Below are positions 56,468 to 62,408 of a stretch of 64,000 bases of DNA, piece by piece. Numbering within the stretch: the stretch's first letter is position 1; each line of letters begins with the position of its first letter. The DNA lies in the NCBI GenBank assembly GCA_977020255.1, contig CDROCS010006357.1, forward strand, positions 124,001 to 188,000. The letters run 5' to 3'. This DNA is from Obrimoposthia wandeli. Its lineage: Eukaryota. The position numbers and the translations under genes are program-made. Below the pieces are notes generated by a model. It had not been told where the DNA came from. It was given only the letters and a program-made list of their open reading frames with translations, and did no database searches.

Positions 56468-57187
56468 ATGCAGTTTTATCGAAACCTTCAGCCGATCAAA
56501 GCCATGACGTTTGATTTAGACGATACGCTTTATGATAATCGTCCGGTTATCGTGCGTGCAGAACAAGCTATGTATGATTGGCTGGCAGAGTATCATCCGT
56601 GTAGCAACACCCTCACCAGGCAAGATTGGATGGCATTAAAGCAACATATTGCCATGGCTGATCCAATGCTTAAACATGATGTGACTTTGTGGCGTTACGA
56701 GCTGATAAAGATTGGCTTAATGCAATTAGGCTATCGTCTGATTGACGCTGAAAAAGCCGCTCACCATGGGCTAGAGGTGGTGCTTGCTGTTCGAAATCAG
56801 GTAGATGTACCAGCAGAAACACATCGGGTGCTGAGTGAGCTTGCACAACGTGTGCCTTTGTTGGCGATAACCAATGGTAATGTTGATGCGGATAAAATAG
56901 GGCTAGGGCAATATTTTTCACGGGTATTAGTGGCAGGTCGTGATGGCTTAGCTAAGCCAGCGCCAGATTTGTTTGCTCAAGCGGCGGCATTACTTGGGCT
57001 ACCCGCAGAGCACATATTACATGTGGGCGATCATTTAGTGACAGATGTTGGTGGGGCGAAAAAGAATGGCTTTCAGGCATGTTGGTATAACGATCAATTG
57101 CGCCAATTGCATTCGGAACCAAGAAGTCGGTTGCTTCCTGATGTCGAGATCGCTCAGTTAGCCCCTCTACTTGATCTCGTGCTTTGA
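56468..57187 (+). CDS. yigB: HAD phosphatase YigB
   Basis: FDLDDTL, ITNGN, KP, HVGD..TDV. Confidence 0.9.
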   Translation: MQFYRNLQPIKAMTFDLDDTLYDNRPVIVRAEQAMYDWLAEYHPCSNTLTRQDWMALKQHIAMADPMLKHDVTLWRYELIKIGLMQLGYRLIDAEKAAHHGLEVVLAVRNQVDVPAETHRVLSELAQRVPLLAITNGNVDADKIGLGQYFSRVLVAGRDGLAKPAPDLFAQAAALLGLPAEHILHVGDHLVTDVGGAKKNGFQACWYNDQLRQLHSEPRSRLLPDVEIAQLAPLLDLVL

Positions 57188-57227
57188 TATAAAAAAGAAT
57201 ACAGATTCAAGTAACGAATCAAAGAGC

Positions 57228-57253
57228 AAAAAGGCGATCAATGATCGCCTTTT
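57228..57253. terminator. Bidirectional terminator yigB / DoxX gene
   Basis: aaaaaggcgatca-a-tgatcgcctttt. Confidence 0.8.
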
Positions 57254-57285
57254 GTGATTATAGTGCTGAGTAACGAAACCCTAAG

Positions 57286-57747
57286 CTACTTAATCAAGCT
57301 ACGTTTAGGTTGCTCGTTACTGATTAAGCGATCAAGTGAAAATAGCCCAGCTCCCCAGAAGACATTCACTAAAATCATCATTCCCCATAGCTGGTGGTCA
57401 TAGAAGCCTTTTTCCCACAGTAGCGGATAAGAGGCAACAGCGATGATATTAAAGACAAATAAAATCAATGCCATTGGGCGAGTAAATAAACCAAGCGCTA
57501 AGAATACCGGTAAAATAAGCTCTGCGGCGGTGCCTGAATAAGCGGCTAACTGCCATGGGATAACGGGCACTTTATACTCATATTCGAATAAATACAGTGT
57601 ACTGTCCCAACTTGAAAACTTCACCATCCCTGATTTGAAGAAGACCCAAGCGACCCATAAACGTGTAAATAACAGTAAAAATGGCGTTAAGGGCTCAGCG
57701 ATTTTCTGACCAATATTATCGATACCTCGAATGAAATTCAGCATCAT
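57286..57747 (-). CDS. DoxX-family membrane protein (BufD-like)
   Basis: RLWVAWVFFKSG..K, LFEYEY, ELILPVFLALGLFTR; 4-nt overlap with the upstream gene. Confidence 0.88.
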   Translation of the reverse strand: MMLNFIRGIDNIGQKIAEPLTPFLLLFTRLWVAWVFFKSGMVKFSSWDSTLYLFEYEYKVPVIPWQLAAYSGTAAELILPVFLALGLFTRPMALILFVFNIIAVASYPLLWEKGFYDHQLWGMMILVNVFWGAGLFSLDRLISNEQPKRSLIK

Positions 57748-58520
57748 TTATTTCCCTTTGGTTGACAATGAACATCTGAAAAAATGTGTTGCTGTACTAA
57801 TTCACTGAGCATTGCGAGCATAGTGTCATCTGCATTATCCAGCGTTTTCTGTTGTTGGCTTAAGGTAACAAGTGCGGTCGCGGCGCGATTGGTATTCATC
57901 ACCAAAATCTGTTTGTCACGGTGCTGGATAATGGCTGATTCAGGTTGATTAATATCGAATTCTTCGAAGTTATTATTCGTTACCATTTGCCACAAGGTGA
58001 CCACAGCGTAAGACGAATCAAAACATAAAGTGAGCTGTGGTACTTCAAATTGTAACGATGGAAAATCGTTCTCTGCCAAACCTTGAAGTTTGTGGAGTGG
58101 AAACGATGAATGGATAGCGGGCTGATGATTAGCACGATCAACGCACCATTCTAACGCTGCTAAATCAGCAAGGTATGGAACGGCTTGATGTAATTCGCCG
58201 GTATGGGTAATTACGTCATCTAACCCTGAACCATAATGGCTAACATCCCCTTGCTCAAGGGGATGAGACAGTACATATTGGCGTGCTAATTGGCTAAAGC
58301 ATTCATCACCTACGACGGCTTTTACTGCGGGGTAAGTCGCTTCTAATATCTCAGATAAACTAATAATGAAGTTATTACGGTAAATCTGAATTAACTGATC
58401 TGCAGGAAATTGCCCTCGAGCAATTTGATTTGTCACGTCACTCTCTTGATAGTGGAGTGCATCAGAAAATGCTTTTTGCAGATCATGCAGAGAGCGGCTA
58501 GGGGGTTGCGATTTGTCCAT
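57744..58520 (-). CDS. DUF2063 partner protein (BufC/HvfC-like)
   Basis: LQKAF, IYRNN, L..TYPAV..VVG.ECF..LARQY, YG, YLADLA.LEW. Confidence 0.85.
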   Translation of the reverse strand: MDKSQPPSRSLHDLQKAFSDALHYQESDVTNQIARGQFPADQLIQIYRNNFIISLSEILEATYPAVKAVVGDECFSQLARQYVLSHPLEQGDVSHYGSGLDDVITHTGELHQAVPYLADLAALEWCVDRANHQPAIHSSFPLHKLQGLAENDFPSLQFEVPQLTLCFDSSYAVVTLWQMVTNNNFEEFDINQPESAIIQHRDKQILVMNTNRAATALVTLSQQQKTLDNADDTMLAMLSELVQQHIFSDVHCQPKGNK

Positions 58521-59358
58521 ATTGCGCCTCCTGCATTAAAATTGTATTGGCTTTATCAGCTTCCCCTAATAACACCGAGAGTTCAGGGATATCTAAATCC
58601 CATTCAATCAGCGTGGGGGTCGCACCGTGTTGCTGTATCCAATGGCGGTACATTTGCCATACGGGCTCACTGACGGGTTTGCTATGGGTATCGATCCAAA
58701 TCTCCCCATCATCAAACTTCTTTACCGTAAAGCCAGCAAGATGAATTTCTTTTACCGCTAATGGATCTAATGCCGAAATGTATTCATTGCTGTCAAAACC
58801 GTGATTAAAGGCACTGACATAAATGTTATTAAAGTCGAGCAGCAATCCACACCCAGTACGTTGTTGTACATGATGCAGAAACTCCCATTCTGGAATAGCC
58901 GAATGTTGGAAGCTTAAATAACTGGATGGGTTTTCAACCAGTAACTGACGACCGAGAAAATCTTGCACCTGTTCGACTTTTTCGCAAAAGTTGCTCAGGG
59001 CTTCTTCGGTATAAGGGAGCGGCAGTAAATCATTAAAAAACTGCCCGTCAACTGAACTCCAACTGAGATGATCTGAGACTGCAATCGGGTTTACCTCATC
59101 AACTAACTGCTTTAGTTGGGCAAGGTGATCGTAGTTTAATGGATCAGCTGACCCCAGTGACAATCCAATACCATGACAACTGATAGGGTAACTCTCGGCT
59201 ATTTGACGTAGTTGTTCTCGCGCCATAGAAGCCGGATTAAAATAGTTCTCACTATGAATCTCAAACCAGCCAATATCTGGCTGTTGAGTAATGACTTGAG
59301 ATACGTGGGGAGAGCGTAAGCCCACCCCAACCATCTGTTGTTGAGACAATAAGCTCAA
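58498..59358 (-). CDS. DUF692 multinuclear non-heme iron oxidative enzyme (BufB/MbnB/TglH family)
   Basis: GVGLR, EIHSENY, HGIGLSLG, SDHLSW, DLLPLP, ENPSSY, LLLDFNNIYV, EIHLAG, IDTH, LIEWD. Confidence 0.93.
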   Translation of the reverse strand: MSLLSQQQMVGVGLRSPHVSQVITQQPDIGWFEIHSENYFNPASMAREQLRQIAESYPISCHGIGLSLGSADPLNYDHLAQLKQLVDEVNPIAVSDHLSWSSVDGQFFNDLLPLPYTEEALSNFCEKVEQVQDFLGRQLLVENPSSYLSFQHSAIPEWEFLHHVQQRTGCGLLLDFNNIYVSAFNHGFDSNEYISALDPLAVKEIHLAGFTVKKFDDGEIWIDTHSKPVSEPVWQMYRHWIQQHGATPTLIEWDLDIPELSVLLGEADKANTILMQEAQYGQIATP

Positions 59359-59362
59359 TTAC

Positions 59363-59620
59363 TTAGCCCTCAGTAGAACCACCCGCTAGGCGGTCGCATA
59401 ACCCTTTGGGTACCATCATGAATGCATCTTTTTGGCCATCAGCTTTTGATGTTCCGGCACATGAACTGGTTTTGGTCGCACAGTCATTCTTACCGGCTTT
59501 AGCTACGCCGTAGCACTTTTCTTTTTCTTCAGCGGCAACGGCAGAGGTAGAAGCCACAGTACCCGCTAGAGCAATAAGACCTGAAACAGCAGTAGCTAAA
59601 GCAATATTGGTTTTTTTCAT
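59363..59620 (-). CDS. DUF2282 RiPP precursor, copy 2 (BufA1-like)
   Basis: Sec signal ending AVA; EKCYGV..AGKNDC..SSCAG..K.D..DAF..VPKGLC.RL.GG with 4 Cys. Confidence 0.9.
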   Translation of the reverse strand: MKKTNIALATAVSGLIALAGTVASTSAVAAEEKEKCYGVAKAGKNDCATKTSSCAGTSKADGQKDAFMMVPKGLCDRLAGGSTEG

Positions 59621-59686
59621 GATGGTTCCTCAAAATTTACGTATTGCTGCGCAATGGCACAGCAAGATATTTAATTAGTTAAAAGG

Positions 59687-59947
59687 TTACGCTGATTCGG
59701 TAGAACCACCCGATAAGCGGTCACATAGACCTTTAGGAACCATAATGAAAGCATCTTTCTGACCATCAGCTTTTGCTGTGCCGGCACATGAACTGGTTTT
59801 GGTCGCACAGTCATTTTTACCCGCTTCAGCAACGCCGTAGCACTTTTCTTTTTCATCAGCGGCAACCGCAGATGTTGAAGCGACTGTTCCGGCTAGAGCA
59901 ATAAGACCTGAAACGGCAGTGGCTAAGGCAATGTTTGTCTTTTTCAT
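59687..59947 (-). CDS. DUF2282 RiPP precursor, copy 1 (BufA1-like)
   Basis: Same architecture; SD gagga; Cys36, 47, 54, 75. Confidence 0.9.
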   Translation of the reverse strand: MKKTNIALATAVSGLIALAGTVASTSAVAADEKEKCYGVAEAGKNDCATKTSSCAGTAKADGQKDAFIMVPKGLCDRLSGGSTESA

Positions 59948-60191
59948 AATAAATCCTCTTTAATACGTTGGCTGTTGCTGTAGTTGCAACGTTTCCTTTG
60001 ATTTAACTTACTTTGCTATGGCGCTTTAAGCGCTCTCGAAATATAAGAAAGGGTAAACACAGAATTAATTTCACCTTTTTTTATCTTTTTTAAAGATTCA
60101 TTAACAATTCCGCTAAGAAAAAGCATAGAACAAAAATAAACAAGCAAGGTATTGTGTAATCAAAAGTTATCAAAGCATTCTGAAAATGAGC

Positions 60192-60224
60192 TGGTATAAT
60201 CCTCACCATTGTATAAATAACCAG
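60192..60224 (+). promoter_or_regulatory. uvrD extended -10 (TGgTATAAT) and degenerate LexA box (60209-60224)
   Basis: tTGTATAAATAACCAG versus the E. coli uvrD SOS box CTGTATATATACCCAG. Confidence 0.6.
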
Positions 60225-60233
60225 TAGATAGCG

Positions 60234-62408
60234 ATGGACGTTTCACTCCTGTTAGATGGGCTCAATGACAAACAAAGAGAAGCGGTGGCAGCACCGTTAG
60301 GAAACCACCTTGTACTAGCGGGAGCGGGTAGTGGTAAAACCCGAGTGCTAGTCCATCGTATTGCGTGGTTAATGCAGATAGAACAAGCGTCGTCGTACTC
60401 GGTCATGTCTGTGACGTTTACTAATAAAGCGGCTGCTGAAATGCGTGGTCGAATTAATGAATTGATGCAAGGTTCATCGGCGGGCATGTGGAATGGTACA
60501 TTCCACGGTTTATGCCATCGCATGCTACGTGCGCATTATCTTGATGCGCGTTTACCTGATGATTTCAATATTCTTGATTCTGATGATCAAATGCGTTTGT
60601 TACGCCGTTTGATTAAAGCGCAAAATCTTGATGAAAAGCATTGGCCAGCACGCCAAGCTGCGTGGTACATCAACGGTAAAAAAGACGAAGGTTTACGCCC
60701 TGCCAATATTGATGCTTTTAACGATCCGGTTGAAAAAACATGGTTGCGTATTTATACCGCCTACCAAGAGGCGTGTGATCGTGCAGGATTAGTCGATTTT
60801 GCTGAATTGTTGTTACGTGCTTTTGAATTGGTTCGTGACAATAAACATATTCGTGAGCATTACCAAGCGCGTTTCAAGCACATTTTGGTCGACGAATTTC
60901 AAGATACCAACAACATCCAATTTGCATGGCTGCGCTTAATGGCGGGTGTCGATTGTAATGTGATGATCGTGGGTGATGATGATCAGTCAATCTATGGCTG
61001 GCGTGGTGCTCAGGTTGAAAATATTCAACGCTTCTTGCGTGATTTTACCAATGCATCGTCTATTTTCCTTGAACAAAATTACCGCTCTACCGGTAACATT
61101 CTAAATGCTGCCAATGAATTAATTGCCAATAACAATGAGCGTATGGGCAAGAAGTTATGGACGGATGGTGAAGATGGCGAGTTGATCTCACTGTATTCTG
61201 CTTTTAATGAATTGGATGAAGCCCGTTTTTCGGTGGGTAAAATCAAAGAATGGCGTAATGAAAAAGGCGGTTCGCTGAACGATACGGCCTTTTTATACCG
61301 TAGCAATGCGCAATCTCGCGTACTGGAAGAAGCCTTAATTCAAGCGGGTTTACCGTACCGTATTTATGGTGGTATGCGTTTCTTCGAACGTCAGGAAGTG
61401 AAAGATTCACTGGCGTACCTGCGTTTGATGGCCAACCGAAATGATGATGCCTCTTTTGAGCGTGTGGTGAATACCCCTACGCGTGGTCTGGGCGATCGTA
61501 CCTTAGAAACTATTCGTTTAGCCGCCCGTGATCGCAGTGTCACCATGTGGCAAGCCAGTATATCGCTGCTTGAAGAGCAAGTGCTGGCGGGCCGTGCCGC
61601 GAACTCATTACGTCGTTTTATTGAGTTGGTTAATGCACTGGAAGACGATACGCGAGACTTACCGTTATTCCAGCAAACGGATGATGTGATCCGTAACTCG
61701 GGTTTGCGTGCGATGTACGAGCAAGAAAAAGGCGAAAAAGCCCAGGCTCGTATCGAAAACTTAGAAGAATTAGTCACGGCAACGCGTCAATTTGTCGTGC
61801 CAGAAGAAGCGGAAGAGATGACGCCATTAGCGGCGTTTTTATCCCATGCGGCACTAGAAGCTGGCGAAGGTCAGGCAAATGACTTTGAAGATGCGGTGCA
61901 GTTAATGACCATGCACAGTGCGAAAGGGTTAGAGTTCCCTATTGTCTTCATGGTGGGTGTTGAAGAGGGCATGTTCCCGAGTTCACGCACCACGGAAGAA
62001 GTCGGACGCTTAGAAGAAGAACGTCGCTTGTGTTACGTCGGCATGACCCGTGCGATGAAGAAGTTGTACATCACGTATGCTGAAATGCGCCGTTTATACG
62101 GTAAAGATAATTTCCATAAGCCATCACGATTTATTCGTGAAATTCCTACGGAGTTTGTGGAAGAAGTGCGGATGAAAGCACAAGTCTCTCGTCCTGCAAG
62201 TAGTGGACGTTTTAGCCAAACCCAAGTGAATGATAACTTTAACCAAACGGGTTTTAATTTAGGCCAACGTGTTAAGCACCCTAAATTTGGTGACGGTACC
62301 ATCATTAATTTTGAAGGCAGTGGTGCGCAAAGCCGTGTTCAAGTCGCTTTCAATGGTGAAGGTATTAAGTGGTTAGTGACGCAGTACGCTAAGCTCGATC
62401 CGATGTAA
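60234..62408 (+). CDS. uvrD: DNA helicase II
   Basis: AGAGSGKT, DEFQD, GDDDQSIY, QNYRS, HSAKGLE, EERRLCYV. Confidence 0.97.
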   Translation: MDVSLLLDGLNDKQREAVAAPLGNHLVLAGAGSGKTRVLVHRIAWLMQIEQASSYSVMSVTFTNKAAAEMRGRINELMQGSSAGMWNGTFHGLCHRMLRAHYLDARLPDDFNILDSDDQMRLLRRLIKAQNLDEKHWPARQAAWYINGKKDEGLRPANIDAFNDPVEKTWLRIYTAYQEACDRAGLVDFAELLLRAFELVRDNKHIREHYQARFKHILVDEFQDTNNIQFAWLRLMAGVDCNVMIVGDDDQSIYGWRGAQVENIQRFLRDFTNASSIFLEQNYRSTGNILNAANELIANNNERMGKKLWTDGEDGELISLYSAFNELDEARFSVGKIKEWRNEKGGSLNDTAFLYRSNAQSRVLEEALIQAGLPYRIYGGMRFFERQEVKDSLAYLRLMANRNDDASFERVVNTPTRGLGDRTLETIRLAARDRSVTMWQASISLLEEQVLAGRAANSLRRFIELVNALEDDTRDLPLFQQTDDVIRNSGLRAMYEQEKGEKAQARIENLEELVTATRQFVVPEEAEEMTPLAAFLSHAALEAGEGQANDFEDAVQLMTMHSAKGLEFPIVFMVGVEEGMFPSSRTTEEVGRLEEERRLCYVGMTRAMKKLYITYAEMRRLYGKDNFHKPSRFIREIPTEFVEEVRMKAQVSRPASSGRFSQTQVNDNFNQTGFNLGQRVKHPKFGDGTIINFEGSGAQSRVQVAFNGEGIKWLVTQYAKLDPM

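What the first reader, a model, noticed from the sequence alone, without database searches (positions are those of the whole stretch)
57286..59947. Bufferin-type RiPP metallophore operon: 2x DUF2282 + DUF692 + DUF2063 + DoxX
Seen: five co-oriented, tightly coupled genes (4-nt gap, 23-nt overlap, 4-nt overlap). They encode two secreted 4-Cys precursors, a DUF692 enzyme with intact His/Glu/Asp motifs, its DUF2063 partner and a DoxX membrane protein, closed by a terminator. Established: this architecture defines the Buf1 bufferin systems characterised in Caulobacter, where DUF692/DUF2063 convert the inner Cys residues to 5-thiooxazoles and the exported peptide binds copper. Inference: Cys47 and Cys54 are modified, Cys36-Cys75 form a disulfide, and this is a periplasmic metal-stress peptide system in a Photobacterium-like marine bacterium. 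I know of no characterisation of such a system in this lineage, but could not check the literature.
Basis: partly seen in the sequence, partly recalled or inferred. Interest (0 to 1): 0.85.

Follow-up and report, generated by a model that had tools for sequence, protein, structure and literature searches.

The report
Bufferin copper-peptide operon in Photobacterium
This is an intact, ordinary member of the known bufferin family, in which an iron enzyme modifies small exported cysteine peptides so they bind copper in the periplasm; its only unusual feature is two tandem precursor genes.

Summary
Five co-oriented minus-strand genes at 59947..57286 encode two DUF2282/BufA1 precursors, an MNIO enzyme (NCBIfam BufB equivalog, 388 bits against a cutoff of 310), a DUF2063 partner and a DoxX protein.

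All nine residues aligning with the MbnB iron ligands are present and invariant in 83 relatives. The four Cys are invariant in 91 precursors. The BufC model matches TglI and NGO1945. The BufA model puts Cys36 on a strand and Cys75 in a short helix, as published for Caulobacter BufA1.

The interpretation as a Buf1-type bufferin system is supported by sequence. The chemistry and the copper role remain inferred.

It is not new. Orthologues run through about 30 Photobacterium species and through Vibrio, Grimontia, Enterovibrio and others, always divergent from uvrD. Many are already named "MNIO family bufferin maturase". The literature already reports tandem precursor genes and enrichment in Vibrionales. 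I found no experimental work in this lineage.

Modest additions: the duplication is old and both copies are under purifying selection (dN/dS 0.04). Copy a carries a fixed K41E change. There is a conserved promoter-like motif followed by a 5' hairpin, and no adjacent regulator.

The scan also noted this stretch separately (s1-241270).

The parts
59687..59947 (-). bufA-a: DUF2282/BufA1 precursor, 86 aa. Sec-type signal peptide (probable cleavage after A29 or A30). Cys36/47/54/75. Carries Glu41 where the family has Lys.
59363..59620 (-). bufA-b: second DUF2282/BufA1 precursor, 85 aa, 93% identical to bufA-a in protein and 87% in DNA. Keeps the family-consensus Lys41. Lies 4 nt upstream of bufB.
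58498..59358 (-). bufB: multinuclear non-haem iron oxidative enzyme (MNIO, formerly DUF692). Ligand-equivalent residues are H62, H97, E142, D175, N178, H206, D223, H225 and E252.
57744..58520 (-). bufC: partner protein with a DUF2063 N-domain and an RRE-type C-domain.
57286..57747 (-). bufD: DoxX-family membrane protein. Hydrophobic stretches at 19-42, 67-113 and 120-142, which I read as about four helices.
57229..57253 (-). Intrinsic-terminator-like hairpin (11 pairs plus T-run) closing the operon. It lies between the operon and the convergent yigB-like gene.
60045..60072 (-). Promoter-like bipartite motif GAAA(G/T)-N17-T(A/T)TC(T/C)T, conserved upstream of bufA in Photobacterium, Vibrio, Grimontia, Enterovibrio and Thaumasiovibrio. 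The sigma factor is unknown.
   Evidence: inference
60021..60033 (-). Short GC hairpin (GCGC-loop-GCGC) just downstream of the promoter-like motif. The stem sequence differs between species but pairing is kept. Statistical support is weak.
59644..59665 (-). 9-bp hairpin in the 66-nt spacer between the two precursor genes, conserved in P. profundum and P. frigidiphilum. Possibly an mRNA stability or attenuation element.
   Evidence: inference

Best explanation
This is a Buf1-type bufferin (captophorin) biosynthetic operon. Two nearly identical precursors of about 86 residues are made in the cytoplasm. The BufB-BufC complex, an iron-dependent MNIO oxidase with its DUF2063/RRE partner, oxidises the two inner cysteines (Cys47 and Cys54) to 5-thiooxazole rings. 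The Sec system exports the peptide and signal peptidase removes about 29-30 residues. The outer cysteines (Cys36 and Cys75) form a disulfide in the periplasm. The resulting small protein of about 56 residues binds excess copper through the thiooxazole thiols and so protects the cell. DoxX is a conserved membrane accessory protein of unknown step. Shown here: gene content, order and coupling, family membership, intact metal ligands, conserved Cys and predicted folds. Inferred from Caulobacter and other characterised systems: the chemistry, export, disulfide and copper function.
For: Pfam hits to all four families. NCBIfam MNIO_BufB equivalog at 388 bits against a cutoff of 310, while HvfB, MbnB, ApyH and ChrH all fall below their cutoffs. 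Residues aligned to MbnB H90, E133, D163, N166, H192, D208, H210 and E239, plus H62 by motif for H54, are present and invariant in 83 relatives. The four Cys are invariant in 91 DUF2282 proteins. The BufC AlphaFold model (pLDDT 86) matches TglI (8hci_A, 8hi7_A) and NGO1945 (3dee) at probability 1.00. The BufA model core (pLDDT 70-82) has two strands and a short helix, with Cys36 on strand 1 and Cys75 in the helix. This matches the description of Caulobacter BufA1. Translational coupling and a single terminator are present. The A-B-C-DoxX order recurs in 36 of 80 distant loci and in all 12 Vibrionaceae loci inspected. The chemistry and copper role are published for Buf1 (PMC11626156) and generalised to MNIO-PME1 clusters (PMC13097082).
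Against: No experiment exists for this lineage. Co-transcription is not shown. Metatranscriptome contigs cover the genes only at low depth, and the tool itself warns that they do not prove transcription. The CysII-CysIII spacing is 7 residues here against 8 in Caulobacter Buf1. No metal-responsive regulator or ECF sigma/anti-sigma pair lies beside the operon, so the inducing signal is unknown. Fitness data for DUF692/DUF2063 in other gammaproteobacteria point to chlorite stress rather than copper.
Confidence: 0.82

Rival explanations
1. The machinery and chemistry are the same, but the main physiological role in Vibrionaceae is protection against oxidants (chlorite/hypochlorite, sulfur or redox stress) or another metal, not copper buffering.
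For: Transposon fitness data show that DUF692/DUF2063 operons matter for chlorite resistance in Pseudomonas stutzeri, Kangiella and Shewanella. DoxX homologues are linked to oxidative and sulfur stress (Discussion passage). The operon here is a conserved chromosomal fixture next to uvrD, not part of a metal-resistance island. It lacks the metal-responsive sigma/anti-sigma pair seen in Caulobacter.
Against: Every biochemically characterised MNIO-PME1 product binds copper. Chlorite and hypochlorite stress and copper stress may be linked, so the two roles are not exclusive.
Confidence: 0.15
2. It is an oxazolin/Hvf-type or methanobactin-type system: an EGKCG-repeat peptide, or a secreted copper-acquisition chalkophore.
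For: BufB shows weaker homology to HvfB (244 bits) and MbnB (75 bits). DoxX and BufC weakly hit the HvfX and HvfC models.
Against: All those hits fall below their curated cutoffs, while BufB passes its own. The precursors are DUF2282 proteins with four Cys and no EGKCG repeats. No MbnC, exporter or TonB receptor gene lies in the operon.
Confidence: 0.02
3. One of the two precursor genes is a redundant, decaying duplicate with no function of its own.
For: The copies are 93% identical in protein. Most Vibrionaceae manage with one copy.
Against: Between the paralogs, dN/dS is 0.04 with dS about 0.7. Each copy is closer to its orthologue in P. profundum, P. indicum and P. frigidiphilum than to its neighbour. 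Both frames are intact, with their own ribosome-binding sites.
Confidence: 0.1

Closest known systems
Caulobacter vibrioides buf1ABCD (CCNA_03363-03366), bufferin 1
   Same: Same four protein families in the same order (DUF2282 precursor, MNIO, DUF2063-RRE partner, DoxX). The precursor has a Sec signal peptide and four conserved Cys. CysI-CysII and CysIII-CysIV spacings are identical (11 and 21). The predicted fold is the same: two strands plus a short helix carrying CysIV.
   Different: There are two tandem precursor genes here instead of one. The CysII-CysIII spacing is 7 rather than 8. There is no neighbouring SigF/NrsF regulator pair. The operon sits between yigB and uvrD.
gig (gold-induced genes) operons of Cupriavidus metallidurans and Legionella pneumophila
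   Same: The same four-gene bufferin architecture. These operons are induced by gold, copper or cadmium (PMC11626156).
   Different: Induction is untested here, and those organisms carry the operon in a different genomic setting. Legionella has up to five or six copies.
HvfABC / oxazolin (Haemophilus influenzae), gonophorin and fontiphorin
   Same: An MNIO plus DUF2063 (PME1) pair installs 5-thiooxazoles on a Sec-exported Cys peptide, often with a DoxX partner. All belong to the proposed captophorin class.
   Different: Those precursors carry EGKCG repeats with many Cys and are not DUF2282 proteins. BufB here scores below the HvfB cutoff.
Methanobactin MbnABC
   Same: A homologous MNIO enzyme with the same iron-ligand set, making a Cys-derived copper-binding heterocycle.
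   Different: MbnB makes oxazolone-thioamide. It uses MbnC, not a DUF2063 partner. Its product is a small secreted chalkophore for copper uptake, not a periplasmic buffer.
TglHI (Pseudomonas syringae 3-thiaglutamate pathway)
   Same: The BufC model matches TglI structurally, and BufB matches TglH by sequence.
   Different: TglHI excises the Cys beta-carbon on a different substrate and has no Sec precursor.

Membership tests
Buf1-type bufferin gene cluster | Precursor matches the DUF2282/BufA1 profile (PF10048) | tested here: met
   Both precursors score 82-83 bits against a cutoff of 22.4, covering profile positions 1-52 of 53.
Buf1-type bufferin gene cluster | Four conserved Cys (CysI-IV) in the core | tested here: met
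   Cys36/47/54/75 are present in both copies and invariant in 91 homologues.
Buf1-type bufferin gene cluster | N-terminal Sec signal peptide on the precursor | tested here: met
   Judged by inspection only, since no signal-peptide predictor was available. The N-terminus reads MKK, then about 20 hydrophobic residues, then an A-V-A/A cleavage motif. This N-terminal pattern is conserved across Vibrionaceae copies.
Buf1-type bufferin gene cluster | MNIO enzyme of the BufB type with an intact multi-iron ligand set | tested here: met
   NCBIfam MNIO_BufB equivalog at 388 bits against a cutoff of 310. H62, H97, E142, D175, N178, H206, D223, H225 and E252 align to the MbnB ligands and are invariant in 83 sequences.
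Buf1-type bufferin gene cluster | [quoted passage not shown] | tested here: met
   PF09836 at E 4.5e-20, protein length 258 aa. The AlphaFold model matches TglI and NGO1945/3dee at probability 1.00.
Buf1-type bufferin gene cluster | DoxX gene in the cluster (frequent, not obligatory) | tested here: met
   PF07681 at 61.5 bits against a cutoff of 23.6. Hydrophobic stretches are consistent with about four helices.
Buf1-type bufferin gene cluster | Genes form one transcription unit | tested here: inconclusive
   The overlaps, the 4-nt gap and the single terminator argue for one unit. The RNA-library contigs are low-depth and do not prove a single transcript.
Buf1-type bufferin gene cluster | Inner Cys converted to 5-thiooxazole (-4.03 Da each, ~305 nm absorbance) and outer Cys joined by a disulfide | not testable with these tools
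   Requires LC-MS, UV and NMR of the peptide. The predicted fold is compatible with this.
Buf1-type bufferin gene cluster | Copper binding and protection under copper stress | not testable with these tools
   Known only for Caulobacter and a few others.
Hvf/oxazolin (EGKCG) system | HvfB-type MNIO and an EGKCG-repeat precursor | tested here: not met
   HvfB scores 244 bits against a cutoff of 360. The precursors contain no EGKCG repeat.
Methanobactin system | MbnB equivalog with an MbnA/MbnC partner | tested here: not met
   MbnB scores 75 bits against a cutoff of 325. No MbnC-like gene is present.

The most novel reading that the evidence does not exclude
The two tandem precursors are not redundant. 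Copy a has carried a charge-reversing K41E change six residues before the first modified Cys, fixed in at least four species, and this helps lower its mature pI to about 5.2 against 7.9 for copy b. Both copies are under strong purifying selection. They could be two metallophores with different metal affinity or specificity, or a pair expressed at different levels, because a hairpin follows copy a while copy b is directly coupled to bufB. In addition, the Vibrionaceae operon may be driven by a conserved, so far unassigned promoter type rather than the ECF sigma/anti-sigma pair of other bufferin loci.
Probability: 0.2. Interest if true: 0.4.

Novelty: new member of a known kind. Interest (0 to 1): 0.2.

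Why it matters
This finding adds little to general knowledge. Bufferins are the largest known MNIO-modified peptide family, and this operon is a textbook example that public annotation pipelines already name. Its value is local. It gives a correct annotation for a Photobacterium of the P. profundum group. It shows that the operon is a stable chromosomal fixture of many Vibrionaceae, lying next to uvrD. It also offers a natural two-precursor, one-enzyme case with defined sequence differences, which could be used to study substrate tolerance and metal selectivity. Finally, it raises the question of how bufferin operons are regulated where no dedicated sigma factor is encoded nearby.

Tried and rejected
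1. Clade-restricted horizontal acquisition. The genome-contig scan returned only four Photobacterium species and then about 50%-identical alphaproteobacteria. This was an artefact of the exact-peptide pattern search. The protein search shows a continuous 95-60% identity series across Vibrionaceae. GC content matches the flanks. The idea is rejected.

2. Single-sequence and profile searches of BufC against PDB sequences found nothing useful. Only the structure comparison recovered TglI and NGO1945.

3. BufA has no solved relative by sequence.

4. An Rfam scan of 57100-60400 gave no credible RNA family.

5. Laying metatranscriptome contigs on the operon shows that close relatives are present in marine-sediment RNA libraries. 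All genes, including the flanks, are covered at a similar low depth. It neither proves nor refutes co-transcription.

6. The 5' hairpin covariation test is only weakly supportive: 100% paired and 2 compensatory pairs, but 38 of 500 shuffles do as well.

7. The promoter-like motif occurs once in the window against 0.4 expected, so only its cross-species conservation counts as evidence.

8. Searches of earlier scan notes for regulators gave nothing usable.
Full report
**Observation**

The stretch 57286-59947 carries five co-oriented ORFs on the minus strand:
- bufA-a, 59947..59687, 86 aa
- bufA-b, 59620..59363, 85 aa
- an MNIO gene, 59358..58498, 286 aa, with a TTG start and an in-frame ATG at codon 9
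- a DUF2063 gene, 58520..57744, 258 aa
- a DoxX gene, 57747..57286, 153 aa

A hairpin of 11 pairs followed by a T-run lies at 57253..57229.

Pfam gives PF10048 for both small proteins (E about 1e-23), PF05114 (E 8e-109), PF09836 (E 4.5e-20) and PF07681 (E 1e-16). NCBIfam places the enzyme in the MNIO_BufB equivalog, at 388 bits against a cutoff of 310. HvfB, MbnB, ApyH and ChrH all stay below their cutoffs.

The flanking genes are DUF484, xerC and a yigB-like HAD phosphatase on one side and uvrD on the other.

**Catalytic and substrate features**

The phmmer alignment to MbnB (7tcr_A) and to 3bww was read together with the published MbnB ligand list: H54, H90, E133, D163, N166, H192, D208, H210 and E239 (PMC9060507). 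This maps the ligands to BufB H62, H97, E142, D175, N178, H206, D223, H225 and E252. H62 and E252 were assigned through the 3bww alignment and the conserved (L/I)E(W/R)D motif, because the 7tcr alignment is ambiguous or absent at those points.

All nine positions are invariant in 83 BufB-like sequences taken from the fetched loci.

The precursors have a Sec-type N-terminus (MKK, a hydrophobic stretch, then AVA-A) and Cys at 36, 47, 54 and 75. These four Cys are invariant in 91 DUF2282 proteins. Spacings I-II (11) and III-IV (21) equal those of Caulobacter Buf1 (core Cys12, 23, 31 and 52). Spacing II-III is 7 here instead of 8.

An AlphaFold model of BufC (pLDDT 86) matches TglI (8hci_A, 8hi7_A) and NGO1945 (3dee) at probability 1.00. 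These are the known MNIO partner fold (PMC12452194).

A model of BufA-a has a moderately confident core (pLDDT 70-82) with strands at 33-37 and 67-71 and a short helix at 74-77. This puts Cys36 on the first strand and Cys75 in the helix. The geometry matches the one described for the CysI-CysIV disulfide of Caulobacter BufA1.

**What it most likely does**

In Caulobacter, BufB1/BufC1 convert CysII and CysIII to 5-thiooxazoles (-4.03 Da each). CysI and CysIV form a disulfide. The Sec signal peptide is removed, and the periplasmic product binds Cu(I)/Cu(II) and improves growth under copper stress (PMC11626156).

Later work assigns 5-thiooxazole formation to MNIO-DUF2063 clusters in general and proposes the class name captophorins (PMC13097082).

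By homology, the same steps are the best explanation here.

**Distribution**

A first scan suggested a clade-restricted operon, but that came from the pattern-based search. The protein search returns a continuous identity series from 95% to about 60%. It runs through roughly 30 named Photobacterium species and through Veronia, Enterovibrio, Grimontia, Thaumasiovibrio and many Vibrio. Many of these proteins are already named "MNIO family bufferin maturase" by NCBI or UniRef.

In the 12 Vibrionaceae loci I inspected, the operon is always divergent from uvrD. In most it is flanked on the other side by yigB-xerC-DUF484-dapF. In E. coli K-12, yigB and uvrD are adjacent.

GC content does not differ from the flanks. 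The operon is therefore an old chromosomal fixture of the family, though it is not universal. V. cholerae N16961 has none and another Vibrio assembly (GCF_000009745.1) has one, according to Table S4 of PMC12452194.

The published statement that MNIO-PME1 clusters are enriched in Vibrionales agrees with this.

**The tandem precursors**

Two bufA genes occur in the window, in P. profundum, P. indicum and P. frigidiphilum and in P. rosenbergii. There is only one in P. sagamiensis, P. sanguinicancri, P. leiognathi, Vibrio, Grimontia, Enterovibrio and Thaumasiovibrio. Among 80 more distant loci, 7 also have tandem precursors. The literature already mentions such clusters.

Only the coding sequence is duplicated, at 87% nucleotide identity. 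Between the paralogs, dS is about 0.69 and dN/dS is 0.04. Each copy is closer to its orthologue in the sister species than to its neighbour. The duplication is therefore old, the copies are not being homogenised, and both are under purifying selection.

Copy b keeps the family-consensus Lys41. Copy a has Glu41 in all four species. The predicted mature pI is 5.2 for copy a and 7.9 for copy b.

A 9-bp hairpin sits in the 66-nt spacer after copy a and is conserved in the sister species. In V. proteolyticus and V. japonicus, stronger hairpins follow the single bufA (z -4.0 and -2.7). This fits the common arrangement in which the precursor message is made or kept in excess over the enzyme message, but that reading is inference.

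**Regulation**

No regulator gene lies beside the operon. Upstream of bufA, a bipartite motif GAAA(G/T)-N17-T(A/T)TC(T/C)T is shared by Photobacterium, Vibrio, Grimontia, Enterovibrio and Thaumasiovibrio. It occurs once in the window.

A short GC hairpin follows it. The stem sequence differs between species (GCGC/GCGC; GCACC/GGTGC in P. rosenbergii; CAGGC/GCCTG in V. proteolyticus). On an eight-species alignment, all 33 cells pair and two pairs show compensatory changes, but 38 of 500 shuffles do as well, so support is weak.

Contigs from three marine-sediment RNA libraries end at 60018-60026, just downstream of this hairpin. Depths are low and the flanking genes are covered equally. I therefore do not treat this as a mapped start or as proof of co-transcription.

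Rfam finds nothing credible.

**Rival readings**

The main alternative concerns function, not identity. Fitness data link DUF692/DUF2063 operons to chlorite resistance in three other gammaproteobacteria, and DoxX proteins are linked to oxidative and sulfur stress.

Hvf/oxazolin and methanobactin membership are rejected on curated cutoffs and precursor type.

A decaying duplicate is unlikely, given the low dN/dS.

**Verdict**

This is a new, uncharacterised member of a well-known and already auto-annotated family, with a known minor variation (tandem precursors).

Interest is low. The only open points are whether the two precursors differ in function, and how the operon is regulated in Vibrionaceae.

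Noticed in passing
window 60209-60224 (+), just upstream of the uvrD start at 60234: TTGTATAAATAACCAG resembles the sequence CTGTATATATACCCAG in the yigB-uvrD spacer of E. coli (13 of 16 identical), which I recall to be the uvrD SOS (LexA) box. It is invariant in all Vibrionaceae loci aligned. It is probably the LexA operator of uvrD, about 190 nt from the buf promoter-like motif and probably unrelated to the bufferin operon.
   Followed up: partly
window 60045-60072 and 60021-60033 (-): A conserved promoter-like motif GAAA(G/T)-N17-T(A/T)TC(T/C)T is followed by a short GC hairpin whose stem sequence changes between species while pairing is kept. The sigma factor or regulator is unknown. No ECF sigma/anti-sigma pair lies nearby, unlike many bufferin loci.
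   Followed up: partly
window 59644-59665 (-); L082:4930-4967; L085:2435-2473: Hairpins lie directly after the (first) precursor gene in Photobacterium and, more strongly, in Vibrio proteolyticus and V. japonicus. This may be a way to keep precursor mRNA in excess over enzyme mRNA.
   Followed up: partly
window 59687-59947 versus 59363-59620: Copy a of the precursor has Glu41 where copy b and all single-copy Vibrionaceae homologues have Lys. The change is fixed in four species and helps shift the predicted mature pI from 7.9 to 5.2.
   Followed up: partly
L087:1902-2476 (Photobacterium rosenbergii): A second Photobacterium lineage also has tandem bufA genes, with a different 47-nt spacer and no hairpin. 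I did not resolve whether this is the same old duplication followed by losses or an independent event.
   Followed up: no
other pieces of the same genome (earlier scan notes s1-224269, s1-196573): Earlier first-reader notes report a second DUF2282-MNIO-DUF2063-DoxX cluster, and also a ferritin-like + Cys-rich protein + MNIO + DUF2063 operon, elsewhere in this genome.
   Followed up: no
runs X1-X4 laid on window 57100-60400: Small marine-sediment metatranscriptome libraries from 2014 contain contigs 92-100% identical to this locus, including a 655-nt contig spanning both precursor genes. A close relative of this organism was therefore abundant in those samples.
   Followed up: partly
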